DNA from: Pocillopora damicornis
Lineage: Eukaryota
Length of the DNA: 64,000 bases
Direction of reading: 5' to 3'
Assembly (NCBI RefSeq): GCF_003704095.1
Contig: NW_020844984.1
Span: 310,001-374,000, forward strand
Shown here: positions 4,376-39,661 of the stretch, piece by piece
Layout of the letters: each line of letters starts with the position of its first letter
Numbering within the stretch: position 1 is the stretch's first letter
The notes under the pieces: model-generated
What the model was told of the DNA's origin: nothing
What the model saw: the letters and a program-made list of their open reading frames with translations, nothing else
The model's database searches: none
Program-made: the position numbers and the translations under genes

Positions 4376-5365
4376 CTACGCACATTTAATTAAAGTTTTG
4401 ACAGCTTGTCGAAACTCCTTTCGATAAAAACAGTATATTAGGGGATTCATGGATGATTGCAATAAAAGAAAAGTCACAGAAATTTTTCGGAGGATAGGAG
4501 TTACCAATTCTGGATGGTTGAAGAGATAAAAAGCGTAATGAACTGTTCTGGGTAACCAACAGGCTACGAAAATAACAACTATTAAAACACAAGAAAGAGT
4601 TCCTTTTCGTAACTGAAGATACTGCATACGAGTTTGCTTTTTCCACCAGACTCCACAACTGGTGCTGTTGAGCACTGTTACCTTTTGTCTTTGTTTTTTG
4701 ATGGCGATCAAAATTGTTATGTTTATAACGGACACGATTACTATCGGAAGTATGACAAAGACGATGAGTAAGATGTATGAATAAGTTCTGTTGAGCTCCT
4801 CTACAACGTTCTCCGGCCGAGTGTGGGACCAAATGTTCCTGAGCGAGGCGAGAAACAGTGGAGTGAGCCACACAACCGATAAAATCACACGGAGTTTTCT
4901 TCGCGACATTTTGACCTGGTATTTGAGTGGCTGAAAGATGGCCAGATGTCTGTCGTATGAGATGGCAAGTAAATTGAATGTGGACGTGAGGAGGCACACA
5001 TCTTTGCCACCTTCGAAAAACCAACAAAATTTACTCAAGTTGTAAGAGCAACCAGTGCAAAAGGTGGCATAACCAGGCGTTACTATCACGGCCATTGCAG
5101 CGTCGCAAATGGCCAAGCTCAGCAGAAGCAAATTCATGTAGCTCCGCCTGAGGGTTTCGAACCGTAAAAACGTTGCGCAAGTGAGGGAATTTCCCAGCAG
5201 GATAAGAACACCGAATACACTGTTTATGATCCAAAAAGCGAAGTCAAGCTCTCGGCTACAGTCTCCATTAGACTCGAGTTCACCTGAGGGTGGGTTAAAG
5301 TCTGGAAAATGTACCGAATAATGGCTAGAAAACATAGTTGAATTATTTGAAGACACTTGCGACAT
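4376..5365 (-). CDS. Class A (rhodopsin-like) orphan GPCR, cluster member 1, 329 aa, intronless
   Basis: 7 hydrophobic helices; GN (TM1), LAICD (TM2), DRH, W4.50, CWLP, NPLIY, helix 8 FRQA; N-terminal N-glycosylation sequons. Confidence 0.96.
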   Translation of the reverse strand: MSQVSSNNSTMFSSHYSVHFPDFNPPSGELESNGDCSRELDFAFWIINSVFGVLILLGNSLTCATFLRFETLRRSYMNLLLLSLAICDAAMAVIVTPGYATFCTGCSYNLSKFCWFFEGGKDVCLLTSTFNLLAISYDRHLAIFQPLKYQVKMSRRKLRVILSVVWLTPLFLASLRNIWSHTRPENVVEELNRTYSYILLIVFVILPIVIVSVINITILIAIKKQRQKVTVLNSTSCGVWWKKQTRMQYLQLRKGTLSCVLIVVIFVACWLPRTVHYAFYLFNHPELVTPILRKISVTFLLLQSSMNPLIYCFYRKEFRQAVKTLIKCA

Positions 5366-6277
5366 CGCCAGTTATAATATAGCGAAAAAAGAAAAAAATT
5401 AATGCGTCTCCGTCAGCAGGTCAAAAGCAACTAAATGGAAAAAGGACCTTTCGTCGCATTTAACCAAGCAAGCAAGCACAAAATTTAATGCAACGGATAA
5501 GCATGACTTGTTATAGCACTATTAGCTTCATTCAGCTATTCCGGTAGTTGTTTTCAGGCACGCTTAGGACTAAAATTGTAAATAACAGCCGCACAAGGTG
5601 TAGAACAAATTGAACGTTGACGTCATACGCAAAAGCTGTGAGAAATGTTACAGATGTCAAACAAAGAGAGAGCAATAATATGTGACTTTACAATCGCAAT
5701 TTTAATTTTGAAACTTCCGTTGCAGCATTAGAATAAACATCAGAAGAATCACTTAGTTTCCCAAAGCGCTTTGGCTTGCTGAAAGGTGCACGTGTTTGAA
5801 ATGGTATTGAACATGTATAAACACGCGCGAGTCACATGATCACTGAATAGTTCCGCCTACAGAAGAAAAACGTGAATTGACTTCAAGATATATATGTTAT
5901 AATTCGCGCTGAAAGGTTCAGGGAAGCTCGTGGACAGCTATACCCGTTTTGATAACGTAAACGGCGTCATTTAGACTTTGTCGCTTTCCCAATATCTATT
6001 GCATTTAGATGGATCCTGACAGACCTTCTCAGTTCACTGCCAACCAGCCCTTTGGTTAAAATTTCTCTTTTTCAACGACCTCATCGGCTAGAAACGTAGG
6101 CTCGCTGCTATTCATTCCTCATGCATCTCACAAATAACAAATGTCATTAAATTTTCGCGCCCAATTTGAAGTGTTAAACAGCGGAAATTGGAGTAGTGAG
6201 AACCAAGAGTACAGAATTAATGGAAATATTTCGTCTCATTTCAAAGTTAAACAGATACCGATTTTGTAAGTGGCGCT

Positions 6278-6525
6278 GGATTTAAAGGGACTTTAAAAAG
6301 GCATTCTAAGAACTTCAAAATTGCAAATTTAAAGGAACTTGAGAGGGACAATGTAAAGGAGCGAAAAATTGGCGTCAATTCTAAGGGATCTTAAGAGGCT
6401 ACTTTCATGAACTTAAAAGAGGCGAAGGGACTTAGAGTGGCGTATTAAAGAACTTAAGATGGCTATTTTAAAGGTCTTAAACGTGAAAATTTAAGGAACT
6501 CAAAAAGGCGATTTAAAGGAACTCG
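6278..6525. repeat. Degenerate ~22-24 bp minisatellite (consensus ~ATTTAAAGGAACTTAAAAAGGCG)
   Basis: About 10 imperfect copies of the AAAGG(G/A)ACTT core. Confidence 0.55.
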
Positions 6526-7084
6526 CTATATTTACAATGTTGATTTAGATAGGGCGATACAAAAGCCTTCATCAAGTTTAGCGATTTTGCGCTCAGTTAC
6601 AGTTATAGATCCGACTGAACAATACTCAGTATAGGCTTTACCAATTATGGAAAAACAGATAAAGCAACTCTCGTTGTCGCTCGAACACATTTGCTTATTT
6701 TCACGAATCCCCAAAACCTTACCGTTCTGAGAAAATTTAGATCTGTAAAGCAAAAAACCGTCTGCTAGCCGGCGCGTACATTTCAGGAAACTCAGTTGCA
6801 TGTCAAGTATCAACCATTAAGTGGTGAGTTCCAGAAAATTTCTTTTGTCCTTTGCTAATGGCTGATCTTATATCTTGGTTACAGAGATAATCGTAACTGC
6901 CACTTAGTTATCTTTGAAGTTATCAGTGGTTTAGAGGGAAGCATTTTTTACGGCCTATTACCGAAAAAAAAAACTACAAGCTAAAATTTTTACGGAATAA
7001 TATCGCCTTTTCGCACATATCTGACAGACGAAAAGACAAAAACGGACACAATTTCTATATACACTCCTTAAATGAATGATACAA

Positions 7085-37371: not shown

Positions 37372-37375
37372 TTAA

Positions 37376-37575
37376 GGGTATTTGGTATTATCACAAGGCA
37401 ACTGACTTGATAACGTAAATTGGCCACTGTATAGAGTTTCAGCTTTGAAACTCTTTACGGTGGCCAATGTACGTTATCAACTCAATTGCCTTGTGATAAT
37501 ACCAAATTACTCTGTTAAACTCTCTCAACGACGCAGCGCCATAGTTTTGTTTTTGAAACTCACCCCCTTCGTTCT
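37376..37575. mobile_element. Penelope-like fold-back (inverted dimer) repeat
   Basis: TTTGGTATTATCACAAGGCAA..TTGATAACGTA..TGGCCAC..AGAGTTTC / GAAACTCT..GTGGCCA..TACGTTATCAA..TTGCCTTGTGATAATACCAAA. Confidence 0.7.
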
Positions 37576-38671
37576 ATTATGTATTTAAGTTGGAAAAGAC
37601 AATGGAGGTCGCCAAATCTTAAGGATCATGCATTTTTCGAGAGAATATCTCGACTTCAAGCCGTGATGTCACCCAAACAAATAGGCCATTTTAATTATAT
37701 TAATATTCGCCAAGGAATACAAATTTTTCAAATGGCAGATAAAATTGTCAGCAGTGGGTGATACGTTAGTTTGGCTTTTATTTACGTACATTTGCTCACA
37801 AATTGACAGTTCGCGTATGCTGTACGAAGTAGGCAATTTCTACGTCAGCGAATAAAGCAATTATTTTGCGTAAAAGGATTGTCTGAGGATTTTGAACAAA
37901 TCTGAAAACAGATTGAAATGGATTCCTTCTTTCTACTCGGGGGCAACAGTTGCGAAGACAAAGCTTTAACAGAAAATATAACCTGTTTCATCTCCAGAAT
38001 TAAATCTTATTAGGTTGCTGTTATTTATGTCCACATTTTCGAAAGCTTTACCTTCCTTCAAACAAATTACGAATTTCGCTGCGTGTCAATTGATTTAATT
38101 GTCTTTCGAAATTTTTTGAGACAAACACGGATGCAAATATATAAATACACGATCTCTTTCAAAGAATCAGTTCAGGTCAGTTCTAGCTATTTTATTATCA
38201 CTGGCGCTTGATGCTCAAGTGAGATTTTTAATGTTGAAGGATTGATGCATTTTTAAAAGAAGATTTGTTCCGAAAATTGGATATCAAATGAAGGATGACT
38301 ATAGGACTGGACCACCTGGTCAGCATTCTGGCAATAGTCCACTTGCGATTGAATCATTAACAACAAGATTATTCGTCAGTTAAAACTAGGCTTAAATTAT
38401 TAAATGAAATCAAGCTTTGAACAGTCATCGCGTTGTTACTTCTTATTTCAAAACAGGCCTCTTCATTCCTAAAATGATAAAACTTTTAGTCAAGCATTTC
38501 ACAAATTGTATTATTAAAACTGTACACTTTGGAAAAACAGATTATGTCATCGATAGCGTGTATATCAAACGAGACATCTCGTCGCAAAAACATAGCTGTT
38601 GGCCTTTTTCTAATTGCATTATGCATAACAAATGAAATAAAACAGACACTATTGACAACATGAGTTTCCAA

Positions 38672-39661
38672 TCAGAGATAAGAATTATTTTTCTGTTGCT
38701 TTGGGCCGAAATAAAATCTTGTGATAATGTCCCTTGTAGCTTTTCTGAATTGTGCTCTATACACAGTGTAAATAAATGGATTGAAAGACGATTGTATAAA
38801 TAGGAAAATAAAACAAATTCTGAAAAATAAGGGACTTGATAAGAGAGGATCTGGAGAATCCACAATATAGCTAAAATTATGCACAGTTTTTGGCAACCAA
38901 CATATTACAAATGTCATCACAACAATAACACATGATGTTGTTCCCTTTCTTAAACGGGAAATTTCTCTCAGGTCTTTTTTTTGTTGATCTGGTGAATGCA
39001 AAGCACCACAAATCTTAGCAGCTTGTTCGTGTTTGTGAATATTACGAATTATCTGAATGTTAACAGTCACAATTCCAATCTGAAACAGAAGCACTGGGAT
39101 TATAACGACAAATGTGTCATACAACTTGACTTTAAGGTGACGCTGTGCGTTGTCGTCAGTTCTTTGATTCCATGCGTTGCGTGTTGCAGCTACCACGGCG
39201 GGAATCAACCACACGGCTGTTAAAATGACCCCTACTCTAAGTCTTGTCATTTTGGCACCGTATTGCAACGGACGGAGAATGGCGAGAAAACGATCGTAAG
39301 TAATTGCGCAAATGTTGAGCGTGGTTGCCGCCAGTACGAAGTCTCGAGCCTTTCTTAAAAGCCAACAGTAAGAGGTCAGCGAATGAGGACAGTCTCGGAA
39401 ACAGTGAACTGTGTAAAAGGGAATAACAAAAGCAGCCATTAGGATGTCCGAGGCTGACAAGCTTAACAGAAACATATTCATGAAACTATGGCGAAGTTTC
39501 CTGGACGCTAAGAAAACCACGCAGACGAAACTGTTCCCAAAAAACATGACAATCCCTACAACTGCGTAGAGGACCAAAAAAAACGCCTCCTGTGTTTTGT
39601 TGCAGTTATACTCGATGCCGCTCGTAAAAGATTCGCTGCTGTTCTGGTTCAACGAAGCCAT
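38672..39661 (-). CDS. Class A orphan GPCR, cluster member 8, ~329 aa from the first in-frame ATG, intronless
   Basis: 7TM; GN, LSASD, DRF, CWLP, NPFIY, FRKA. The ORF track starts at a GTG (39694); the first in-frame ATG is 39661 (MASLNQNSS). Confidence 0.95.
   Translation of the reverse strand: MASLNQNSSESFTSGIEYNCNKTQEAFFLVLYAVVGIVMFFGNSFVCVVFLASRKLRHSFMNMFLLSLSASDILMAAFVIPFYTVHCFRDCPHSLTSYCWLLRKARDFVLAATTLNICAITYDRFLAILRPLQYGAKMTRLRVGVILTAVWLIPAVVAATRNAWNQRTDDNAQRHLKVKLYDTFVVIIPVLLFQIGIVTVNIQIIRNIHKHEQAAKICGALHSPDQQKKDLREISRLRKGTTSCVIVVMTFVICWLPKTVHNFSYIVDSPDPLLSSPLFFRICFIFLFIQSSFNPFIYTVYRAQFRKATRDIITRFYFGPKQQKNNSYL

What the first reader, a model, noticed from the sequence alone, without database searches (positions are those of the whole stretch)
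4376..39661. Rewired extracellular cysteines: no ECL2 Cys, but N-terminal Cys + ECL1 CxxC + C3.25 in all eight receptors
None of the eight short ECL2 loops contains Cys, so the near-universal class A C3.25-ECL2 disulfide cannot form, yet C3.25 is kept in 8/8. All eight also have a Cys just before TM1 (GDCSREL, LDCSFQL, LSCDQML, YYCNEAL, VPCNPTL, GSCNRKV, ETCDETL, YNCNKTQ). All have a CxxC (CTGC, CSGC, CLGC, CTNC, CSGC, CAGC) or CxxxC (CSHGC, CFRDC) atop TM2. Four invariant Cys suggest two non-canonical disulfides tying the N-terminus, ECL1 and TM3, leaving the pocket unlidded. A metal- or redox-sensitive Cys4 site is an alternative (inference).
Basis: partly seen in the sequence, partly recalled or inferred. 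Interest (0 to 1): 0.78.

Follow-up and report, generated by a model that had tools for sequence, protein, structure and literature searches.

The report
Coral receptor family with rewired disulfides
Eight neighbouring coral genes encode cell-surface receptors of a common type that have lost the usual stabilising cysteine bridge; they keep four other cysteines that probably form two replacement bridges, a variation of moderate interest because no ligand or function is known.

Summary
The window, from a stony-coral genome, carries eight intact single-exon class A GPCR genes. All eight have a Cys at position 1.27, two Cys at the top of TM2/ECL1, and C3.25. None has a Cys in its short ECL2. The assembly gap at 8896-8995 lies between genes and touches no reading frame.

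The pattern is not chance. It holds in 150 of 158 family sequences from stony corals and sea anemones. Each window gene has its own coral orthologue group.

Natural losses suggest how the Cys pair. The loop Cys (ECL1b) was lost four times. The N-terminal Cys was lost twice, both times in lineages that also lack ECL1b. C2.65 and C3.25 were never lost. This favours a C2.65-C3.25 bridge closing ECL1 and a C1.27-ECL1b bridge tethering the N-terminus. It argues against a four-Cys metal site.

Seventeen of 61 other class A receptor loci in this genome also lack an ECL2 Cys and have a Cys pair bracketing ECL1.

S-S distances could not be measured, because the tools return no model coordinates. The receptors are orphans. 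They are not aminergic: K/R replaces D3.32 and R sits at 6.51. This is a new variant of a known kind.

The parts
4376..5365 (-). GPCR gene 1 (329 aa). Cys codons: C36 5258-5260, C103 5057-5059, C106 5048-5050, C114 (3.25) 5024-5026.
   Evidence: ORF; PF00001 E 1.1e-31; codon coordinates; orthologue group P0130/Orbicella XP_020620706.
7085..8134 (-). GPCR gene 2 (349 aa). Cys codons: C36 8027-8029, C103 7826-7828, C106 7817-7819, C114 7793-7795.
   Evidence: On the tree its nearest sequence is P0034, at a path length of 0.003 changes per column; P0034 stands for 634 member sequences in public assemblies.
8896..8995 (.). Assembly gap (N run). It is intergenic and lies in none of the eight reading frames.
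   Evidence: One search shows the sequence on both sides. The nearest coding ends are 8134 and 11493.
11493..12452 (+). GPCR gene 3 (319 aa). Cys codons: C21 11553-11555, C88 11754-11756, C91 11763-11765, C100 11790-11792.
   Evidence: orthologue group P0061/P0055.
14880..15956 (-). GPCR gene 4 (358 aa), with a longer ECL1 (C-x2-C-x14-C-R). Cys codons: C21 15894-15896, C88 15693-15695, C91 15684-15686, C106 15639-15641.
   Evidence: orthologue group P0091/P0101, sister to a clade with long ICL3.
19507..20478 (+). GPCR gene 5 (323 aa), with an N-terminal tail of only 8 residues before the Cys. Cys codons: C9 19531-19533, C76 19732-19734, C79 19741-19743, C87 19765-19767.
   Evidence: orthologue group P0037/P0044/P0045.
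28278..29327 (-). GPCR gene 6 (349 aa), with CxxxC spacing. Cys codons: C29 29241-29243, C96 29040-29042, C100 29028-29030, C108 29004-29006.
   Evidence: Contigs from RNA libraries of four studies lie on the gene, and contigs of two runs between them span 28035-29489. Orthologue: Stylophora XP_022790805.
32414..33382 (+). GPCR gene 7 (322 aa), the protein that was modelled. Cys codons: C23 32480-32482, C90 32681-32683, C93 32690-32692, C101 32714-32716.
   Evidence: AlphaFold2 mean pLDDT 84.3. RNA-library contigs cover 32227-33307. Orthologues at 68-91% identity in Stylophora, Oculina, Orbicella and Montipora.
32227..32413 (+). 5' untranslated part of the coding exon of gene 7. A splice acceptor (ttttgacag|g) sits at about 32228/32229 and an in-frame TGA at 32291-32293.
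   Evidence: Contigs of three RNA-library runs all stop matching at 32227 and continue upstream with unlike letters (table 7).
38672..39661 (-). GPCR gene 8 (329 aa from the ATG; the mechanical ORF runs to a GTG at 39694), with CxxxC spacing. Cys codons: C20 39602-39604, C87 39401-39403, C91 39389-39391, C99 39365-39367.
   Evidence: orthologue P0065.

Best explanation
The eight genes are old paralogues of an orphan class A GPCR family, so far named only from Hexacorallia (stony corals and sea anemones).

In this family ECL2 has shrunk to a short, Cys-free connection between TM4 and TM5. The usual C3.25-ECL2 disulfide appears to be replaced by two others:
- A core bridge from C2.65 (the first ECL1 Cys, at the top of TM2) to C3.25. 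It closes ECL1 into a loop with 10-17 residues between the two Cys.
- An accessory bridge from C1.27, just before TM1, to the second ECL1 Cys (ECL1b). It ties the base of the N-terminal tail onto that loop.

Together these would brace the TM1-TM2-TM3 side of the extracellular face and leave the pocket without an ECL2 lid.

The pocket is polar and basic (K/R3.32, D3.33, R/K4.60, R6.51, N6.55). The ligand is therefore not a classical monoamine and may be anionic.

What is shown: the genes, the conservation, the absence of an ECL2 Cys, the loss pattern and the pocket residues. What is inferred: that the Cys are oxidised, which Cys pairs with which, and the ligand class.
For: - The genes are intact and belong to PF00001. 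RNA-library contigs cover genes 6 and 7.
- Four Cys are invariant in the eight paralogues and present in 150 of 158 family sequences.
- Positions are fixed: C1.27 in 115 of 115, C2.65 in 126 of 126 and C3.25 in 126 of 126.
- On a 126-sequence tree ECL1b changes state four times and the N-terminal Cys twice. Both N-terminal losses are in lineages that also lack ECL1b. C2.65 and C3.25 never change.
- The short start of P0144, the second lineage lacking both Cys, is real. Stop codons lie just upstream of its Met.
- A Cys pair bracketing ECL1, with no ECL2 Cys, no N-terminal Cys at the matching place and no ECL1b, recurs in 17 other class A loci of this genome. It also appears in unrelated database families such as P0186, P0209, P0230 and P0261. 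The TM2-top/TM3-top pair therefore behaves as a unit of its own.
- AlphaFold2 (pLDDT 84.3) predicts TM4 as helix to residue 169 and TM5 from residue 172, so there is no ECL2 hairpin. Confidence rises from 41 to 80 at about the position of C23.
- Replacement of the canonical bridge by another one has a precedent in MRGPRX1, with C4.64-C5.32 (PMC10286997).
Against: - No S-S or C-beta distances could be measured, because the tools return no coordinates.
- The ECL1 block of the model has only moderate confidence, about 68.
- The pairing rests on only two independent joint losses, and the tool's sign test has no power with so few.
- Three sequences lack ECL1b but keep an N-terminal Cys (P0002, P0089, P0145). 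A free N-terminal Cys is therefore tolerated, or other pairings exist. P0145 has adjacent Cys at 3.24/3.25 and in its N-terminus.
- After loss of two Cys the remaining two could in principle re-pair, so the loss pattern does not strictly exclude other ancestral pairings.
- No chemical evidence shows that any of these Cys is oxidised.
Confidence: 0.58

Rival explanations
1. There are two disulfides, but paired differently. Either C1.27-C2.65 staples TM1 to TM2 while ECL1b-C3.25 closes a small loop, or the two ECL1 Cys form a vicinal bridge (like the CPDC bridge in ECL3 of the adenosine A2A receptor, recalled from memory) while C1.27 bonds C3.25.
For: All four Cys sit on the same TM1-TM2-TM3 corner. 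C1.27 and C2.65 are both in fixed helix register, as a helix-to-helix staple would need.
Against: - Under either alternative, losing ECL1b and the N-terminal Cys leaves C2.65 and C3.25 without their original partners. Yet exactly this pair is what survives in two lineages.
- The same pair occurs alone in many other coral receptor families.
- The ECL1a-ECL1b gap varies from 1 to 4 residues, which is untypical for a conserved vicinal bridge.
Confidence: 0.2
2. The four Cys form an extracellular metal-binding site (Zn or Cu), or a redox-switchable site that gates receptor activity, rather than two permanent structural disulfides.
For: A C-x2-C motif plus two further invariant Cys resembles Cys4 zinc sites. 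Reef corals experience strong oxidative swings (general knowledge). Nothing measured here shows the oxidation state of the Cys.
Against: - Two lineages dropped exactly two of the four Cys and kept the other two. This fits two pairs, not one four-ligand site.
- The 'CxxC' gap varies from 1 to 4 residues and the ECL1b-C3.25 gap from 7 to 14.
- The site faces the oxidising extracellular side, below N-glycosylation sequons in the tail.
Confidence: 0.07
3. The Cys are conserved for another reason, for example direct ligand contact or an intermolecular disulfide that makes receptor dimers or links a partner protein. They do not bridge to one another.
For: An accessible N-terminal Cys or loop Cys could form intermolecular bonds. 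Three sequences keep the N-terminal Cys without ECL1b.
Against: - An even number of extracellular Cys is kept in fixed positions.
- The two losses of the N-terminal Cys both fall in lineages that also lack ECL1b.
- The bracketing pair recurs in other families.
All three are the usual signatures of intramolecular pairs.
Confidence: 0.05

Closest known systems
Biogenic amine and adenosine receptors (histamine H2, beta-1 adrenergic, dopamine D1, adenosine A2A)
   Same: They are the best sequence and fold matches among solved structures: profile E 5e-41 for H2R and Foldseek TM about 0.70-0.75 at 20-27% identity. They share N1.50, D2.50, DRY, W4.50, P5.50, CWxP and NPxxY. H2R also has a Cys in ECL1 that aligns with ECL1b. 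N6.55, the adenine-binding residue of adenosine receptors by my recollection, is kept in 114 of 126.
   Different: There is no ECL2 Cys, so the C3.25-ECL2 bridge cannot form. D3.32 is K/R in 124 of 126, F6.51 is R in 115 of 126, and Y5.58 is N in 126 of 126. ECL2 is a short helical turn rather than a structured lid. The database names of family members disagree with one another (A2a-like, H2, D1-like, alpha-2B-like, M4, tyramine Ser-2-like) and are automatic.
MRGPRX1 and other MRGPRX receptors
   Same: These class A receptors lack the canonical TM3-ECL2 disulfide and carry a substitute disulfide elsewhere (C4.64-C5.32). The authors propose that it reorganises the loops and keeps a wide-open pocket (PMC10286997). 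The principle is the same: the bridge is substituted and the pocket is open.
   Different: The substitute bridge lies on the TM4-TM5 side, not on the TM1-TM2-TM3 side, and C3.25 is not part of it. No specific sequence relationship was seen.
Lipid receptors S1P1 and LPA1, and GPR20
   Same: S1P1 and LPA1 lack the conserved ECL2-TM3 disulfide (PMC7652349). GPR20 has a short, flexible ECL2 without the conserved disulfide, and its N-terminus takes over a role above the pocket (PMC12444479). The coral family likewise combines a short Cys-free ECL2 with an anchored N-terminus.
   Different: By my recollection the lipid receptors do not keep C3.25, whereas here it is invariant. The N-terminal tails here are short (8-35 residues before the Cys), variable and modelled with low confidence. 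No N-terminal helical cap is predicted.
Other short-ECL2 class A receptors of the same coral genome
   Same: Seventeen of 61 surveyed loci have no ECL2 Cys and a Cys pair bracketing ECL1, for example L016, L020, L031, L044, L049, L065, L067 and L068. This looks like the same core bridge.
   Different: They score only 105-175 bits against the family profile, against 365-459 bits for the nine full-length family loci. They lack the C1.27 + ECL1b pair, and where checked they lack the K/R3.32-D3.33 signature.

Membership tests
Class A (rhodopsin-like) GPCR, Pfam PF00001 | Significant match to the 7tm_1 profile over its full length | tested here: met
   All eight match with E 1e-31 to 1e-38, 111-133 bits against a cut-off of 30.5, over profile positions 1-260.
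Class A (rhodopsin-like) GPCR, Pfam PF00001 | Hallmark residues N1.50, D2.50, D/E-R-Y, W4.50, P5.50, CWxP and NPxxY | tested here: met
   N1.50, D2.50, D3.49, R3.50, W4.50, W6.48, N7.49, P7.50 and Y7.53 are invariant or nearly so. P5.50 is kept in 98 of 126 and P6.50 in 125 of 126.
Class A (rhodopsin-like) GPCR, Pfam PF00001 | C3.25-ECL2 (45.50) disulfide. It is near-universal but not obligatory for the family. | tested here: not met
   C3.25 is present in 126 of 126, but no Cys lies in the ECL2 zone of any window gene or true family member.
Biogenic amine receptors | Asp at 3.32 as counter-ion for the amine | tested here: not met
   Position 3.32 is K in 98, R in 26, E in 1 and A in 1 of 126. 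D sits one position later, at 3.33.
Biogenic amine receptors | Aromatic residues at 6.51 and 6.52 lining the pocket | tested here: not met
   Position 6.51 is R in 115 of 126. Position 6.52 is I, S or A.
Adenosine receptors | N6.55 together with ribose-binding S7.42/H7.43 and an ECL2 Phe/Glu, with the ECL1 Cys bonded to ECL2 (features recalled from memory) | tested here: not met
   N6.55 is present in 114 of 126. However, 7.42 is L in 114 and 7.43 is F or L. ECL2 is too short and has no Cys.
Cnidarian neuropeptide GPCRs deorphanised by Thiel et al. 2024 | Listed among the tested or deorphanised Nematostella receptors | tested here: not met
   The Nematostella member EDO36054 occurs only in the file of all GPCRs found (supplementary file 6). 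It was not found in the held text of the list of tested receptors, and four family peptide motifs found nothing in any held supplement. Several of the files were cut when stored.
Receptors with a substituted extracellular disulfide (functional class, not a homology family) | A replacement disulfide demonstrated in a structure or by chemistry | not testable with these tools
   Structure prediction returns no coordinates and none are placed in /data. Only conservation and co-loss evidence is available.

The most novel reading that the evidence does not exclude
The accessory bridge between the N-terminal Cys and the ECL1 loop Cys is not just a brace. It is a reversible, regulatory disulfide. Its reduction or oxidation, or metal binding to the opened Cys cluster, changes receptor activity. 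This hexacorallian receptor family would then be a direct sensor of extracellular redox state or metals, which matters in animals that house photosynthetic symbionts. More broadly, an ECL1-closing C2.65-C3.25 bridge would be a second general solution to stabilising the outer face of class A receptors, used by many cnidarian families.
Probability: 0.08. Interest if true: 0.8.

Novelty: new variant of a known kind. Interest (0 to 1): 0.45.

Why it matters
The TM3-ECL2 disulfide is treated as a near-constant of class A receptors and is built into modelling and alignment practice. The few solved exceptions (lipid receptors, MRGPRX, GPR20) each changed how the pocket is understood.

Here a family of more than 100 sequences keeps C3.25 but evidently uses it for something else. 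The family was already diversified before sea anemones and stony corals split. A related two-Cys version appears in about a quarter of the other receptor loci examined in this genome.

If the bridges are confirmed, three things follow:
- They give a defined structural class for a large block of orphan cnidarian receptors.
- They warn against transferring names such as 'adenosine A2a-like' or 'histamine H2' to them.
- They give simple handles for expression and deorphanisation work in corals: a dispensable pair, an essential pair and a basic pocket.

Without a ligand or a structure the finding remains a sequence-level architectural variant, so its interest is moderate.

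Tried and rejected
- Measuring S-S distances was not possible. The AlphaFold2 job gives only pLDDT and secondary structure, and no coordinate file appears in /data. The Atlas has its own model of this protein, but the tool returns no coordinates from it either.
- Looking for a described relative in the literature found nothing. Six full-text searches and four targeted reads found no paper describing this Cys pattern in cnidarian receptors. 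The Pocillopora receptome paper does not mention disulfides or ECL2.
- Checking whether a Nematostella member had been deorphanised found only EDO36054, and only in the bulk GPCR file of Thiel et al. 2024.
- The taxonomic limits remain open. Every member that carries a name is from Hexacorallia (Stylophora, Oculina, Orbicella, Montipora, Actinia, Nematostella). The Atlas search gave only generic class A neighbours.
- The aminergic/adenosine reading implied by database names was rejected on 3.32, 6.51 and 7.42/7.43.
- The idea that the gap or an upstream exon changes an N-terminus was rejected. The gap is intergenic. Gene 7 has a 5' UTR intron, but an in-frame stop lies between the acceptor and the ATG.
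- The tool's sign test for correlated loss has no power with only two independent pairs, so I report counts and no p-value.

Full report
**What is in the window**

The region 4376-39661 holds eight uninterrupted ORFs of 319-358 codons on both strands. Each matches the rhodopsin-family profile PF00001 over its full length, with E 1e-31 to 1e-38.

The assembly gap at 8896-8995 lies between gene 2, whose start codon ends at 8134, and gene 3, which starts at 11493. No reading frame depends on it. I did not try to fill it.

The window is contig C1619:310001-374000 of a 234-Mb assembly in 4393 contigs. The nearest named proteins are from stony corals. Stylophora is 91% identical to gene 7, Oculina and Orbicella 76-80%, Montipora 68%, and Nematostella 40-42%. 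The genome is therefore that of a stony coral close to Stylophora.

The genes are real:
- The protein of gene 7 is present letter for letter in public assemblies. Genes 2, 3 and 6 each sit beside a public sequence at almost no distance on the family tree, and those sequences stand for 164 to 634 member sequences.
- Contigs from RNA libraries of four studies lie on gene 6, and contigs of three of them on gene 7. The longest ones between them span 28035-29489 and 32227-33307.
- Three of those runs break at 32227 into unlike upstream letters, next to a ttttgacag|g acceptor. An in-frame TGA lies at 32291-32293. Gene 7 therefore has a 5' UTR intron, but its coding sequence is a single exon starting at 32414.

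**The observation**

The paralogues are only 37-46% identical to the first sequence, yet five Cys columns are invariant:
- one Cys two residues before the predicted start of TM1;
- one at the last turn of TM2 (P2.59-x5-C, that is 2.65; called ECL1a here);
- one 2-3 residues later in ECL1 (ECL1b);
- one that counting back from DRY places at 3.25;
- one at 6.37 on the cytoplasmic side.

No Cys lies between TM4 and TM5 in any of the eight. The C3.25-ECL2 bridge therefore cannot form. The Cys codons are listed.

**Conservation outside the window**

A word-index search with gene 7 returned 103 relatives. A full profile search of 1.8 billion representatives added more. Family members scored about 300-440 bits, and there was a clear drop to 180 bits or less for other class A receptors.

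Of 158 family sequences of at least 285 residues, 150 have all four extracellular Cys. In the non-redundant set:
- the N-terminal Cys is exactly 23 residues before N1.50 in 115 of 115;
- C2.65 and C3.25 are each present in 126 of 126;
- ECL1b floats, with 1-4 residues after ECL1a and 7-14 before C3.25.

'CxxC' is thus only the commonest spacing. Apparent ECL2 Cys in a few homologues lie in the TM4 or TM5 ends, not in the loop.

A maximum-likelihood tree of 126 sequences puts each window gene in its own group with orthologues from other corals. Sea-anemone sequences fall into several subfamilies. The paralogues therefore predate the split between anemones and stony corals.

The tandem arrangement is old too:
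- The Stylophora orthologues of genes 6 and 7 carry consecutive accession numbers on one contig.
- Three Orbicella members share one contig.
- Four Nematostella members (EDO36053, EDO36054, EDO36056, EDO36058) lie on one 474-kb scaffold.

**Which Cys pairs with which**

Coordinates of the AlphaFold2 model were not available, so I used natural losses. The exceptions to the four-Cys pattern are as follows:
- Four sequences lack both the N-terminal Cys and ECL1b (P0086, P0092, P0097, P0144).
- Three lack ECL1b only (P0002, P0089, P0145).
- P0102 lacks three of the four Cys, but it aligns with the profile only from position 111 onward, so it was left out of the tree.
- No sequence lacks C2.65 or C3.25 alone. 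No full-length sequence lacks the N-terminal Cys while keeping ECL1b.

On the tree, ECL1b changes state four times and the N-terminal Cys twice. Both N-terminal changes are in lineages that also lack ECL1b:
- One is the P0086/P0092/P0097 clade. Its sister P0089 has already lost ECL1b.
- The other is the long-branched P0144. Its six-residue N-terminus is genuine, because stop codons lie directly upstream of its Met.

A second line of evidence comes from the genome itself. Among 61 other class A loci that I extracted, the classes were:
- 16 have the canonical C3.25 plus an ECL2 Cys, and a longer ECL2.
- 17 have no ECL2 Cys but a Cys pair bracketing ECL1. An eighteenth row in this class is L011, a decayed copy of the family itself.
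- 15 have no Cys in either ECL1 or ECL2.
- 7 have one Cys.
- 5 are other arrangements.

The same two-Cys pattern appears in unrelated database families. The TM2-top/TM3-top pair thus behaves as an independent, recurring unit.

Together these points favour C2.65-C3.25 as the core bridge and C1.27-ECL1b as an accessory bridge. The sample of independent events is small and the tool's sign test has no power, so I put this at about 0.6.

**The lid and the rival readings**

The AlphaFold2 model of gene 7 used a 95-sequence alignment and reached mean pLDDT 84.3 and pTM 0.81. It has TM4 as helix to residue 169 and TM5 from residue 172. ECL2 is therefore a two-residue turn between extended helices, with pLDDT 82-87.

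Residues 1-20 are unmodelled (pLDDT 41), and confidence rises at about C23. The ECL1 block is weaker, at about 68. This is consistent with 'no ECL2 lid'. It cannot say whether the glycosylated N-terminal tail (sequons) covers the pocket.

The Cys4 metal or redox reading is weakened by three points: the variable spacing, the two lineages that kept exactly two Cys, and the extracellular location. It is not excluded.

**What kind of receptor**

The best matches among solved structures are histamine H2, beta-1 adrenergic, dopamine D1, adenosine A2A and TAAR1, at 20-27% identity. The family fails the aminergic test, however. The pocket positions are:

| Position | Residue in the family (of 126) |
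|---|---|
| 3.32 | K/R in 124 |
| 3.33 | D in 111 |
| 4.60 | R/K in 124 |
| 6.51 | R in 115 |
| 6.55 | N in 114 |
| 5.58 | N in 126, replacing the usual Tyr microswitch |

The pocket is basic and polar, which suggests an anionic or zwitterionic ligand. This is inference only. It agrees with a sibling first-stage note on the same stretch (s1-770000).

The automatic database names contradict each other. One Nematostella member appears only in the bulk GPCR list of the large deorphanisation study. It was not found in the held text of the list of tested receptors.

**Comparison with what is known, and novelty**

Class A receptors without the canonical bridge are known:
- S1P1 and LPA1 lack it (PMC7652349).
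- GPR20 has a short ECL2 and an N-terminal cap (PMC12444479).
- MRGPRX1 substitutes a TM4-TM5 bridge, which its authors link to a wide-open pocket (PMC10286997).

Substitution of the bridge is therefore a known kind of event. I did not find a description of three things: the particular solution here (C3.25 kept but apparently re-used for an ECL1-closing bridge), the added N-terminus-to-ECL1 bridge, and the spread of the two-Cys version across coral receptor families. The library does not hold most subscription journals, so the pattern may still have been described.

I class it as a new variant of a known kind, of moderate interest. It is well conserved and cheaply testable, but there is no structure, chemistry or ligand.

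No broken toxin or viral gene was met.

Noticed in passing
G000:C2496:415582-416532 (L009) and G000:C2496:442333-443113 (L011): L009 is a ninth family member on another contig. It has all four Cys but one in-frame TAG in this assembly, while intact 317-318-aa versions (the P0133 cluster, 190 members) are common in public data. About 26 kb away, L011 is a decayed copy with several stop codons.
   Followed up: partly
window 32227-32413: Gene 7 has a 5' UTR intron. RNA-library contigs from three runs break at 32227. Two share one upstream leader and one has a different leader, which suggests alternative first exons.
   Followed up: partly
61 other class A GPCR loci of G000 (L010, L012-L070; L011 is a decayed family copy): Only 16 of 61 have the canonical C3.25 + ECL2 Cys pair. 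Seventeen have a Cys pair bracketing ECL1 and no ECL2 Cys. Fifteen have no Cys at either place and very short ECL2 zones (7-20 residues).
   Followed up: partly
all eight genes; for example window 32414-33382, residues K108, D109, R265, N269 and N202: The family-wide signature is K/R3.32, D3.33, R/K4.60, R6.51 and N6.55, with an invariant Asn in place of the Tyr5.58 activation microswitch. Q7.45 and S7.46 are also invariant.
   Followed up: partly
database relatives P0137 (Nematostella EDO36053, 510 aa), P0139, P0140 (785 aa), P0143: A subclade sister to the gene 4 group carries a very long third intracellular loop and keeps all four extracellular Cys.
   Followed up: no
window 44151-44951 (+): A single-exon ORF of 266 aa has a signal-peptide-like start, a Gly/Ser/Arg-rich stretch, several N-x-S/T sequons and a hydrophobic C-terminus. 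Another first-stage note (s1-770035) calls it a prion/Shadoo-like GPI-anchored protein. I did not check this.
   Followed up: no
window 34-1440 (+): A 468-codon ORF is rich in Pro, Gly, Gln, Asn, Met and Ser (GC 0.44 against about 0.38 elsewhere). It may be an exon of a larger gene at the window edge.
   Followed up: no
window 52546-53538: Further N runs are flanked by tandem repeats with a period of 41-47 nt (up to 5 copies). The long mechanical ORFs here are artefacts of reading through N.
   Followed up: no
window 55866-56078: A 107-nt unit is repeated twice in tandem at 97% identity.
   Followed up: no
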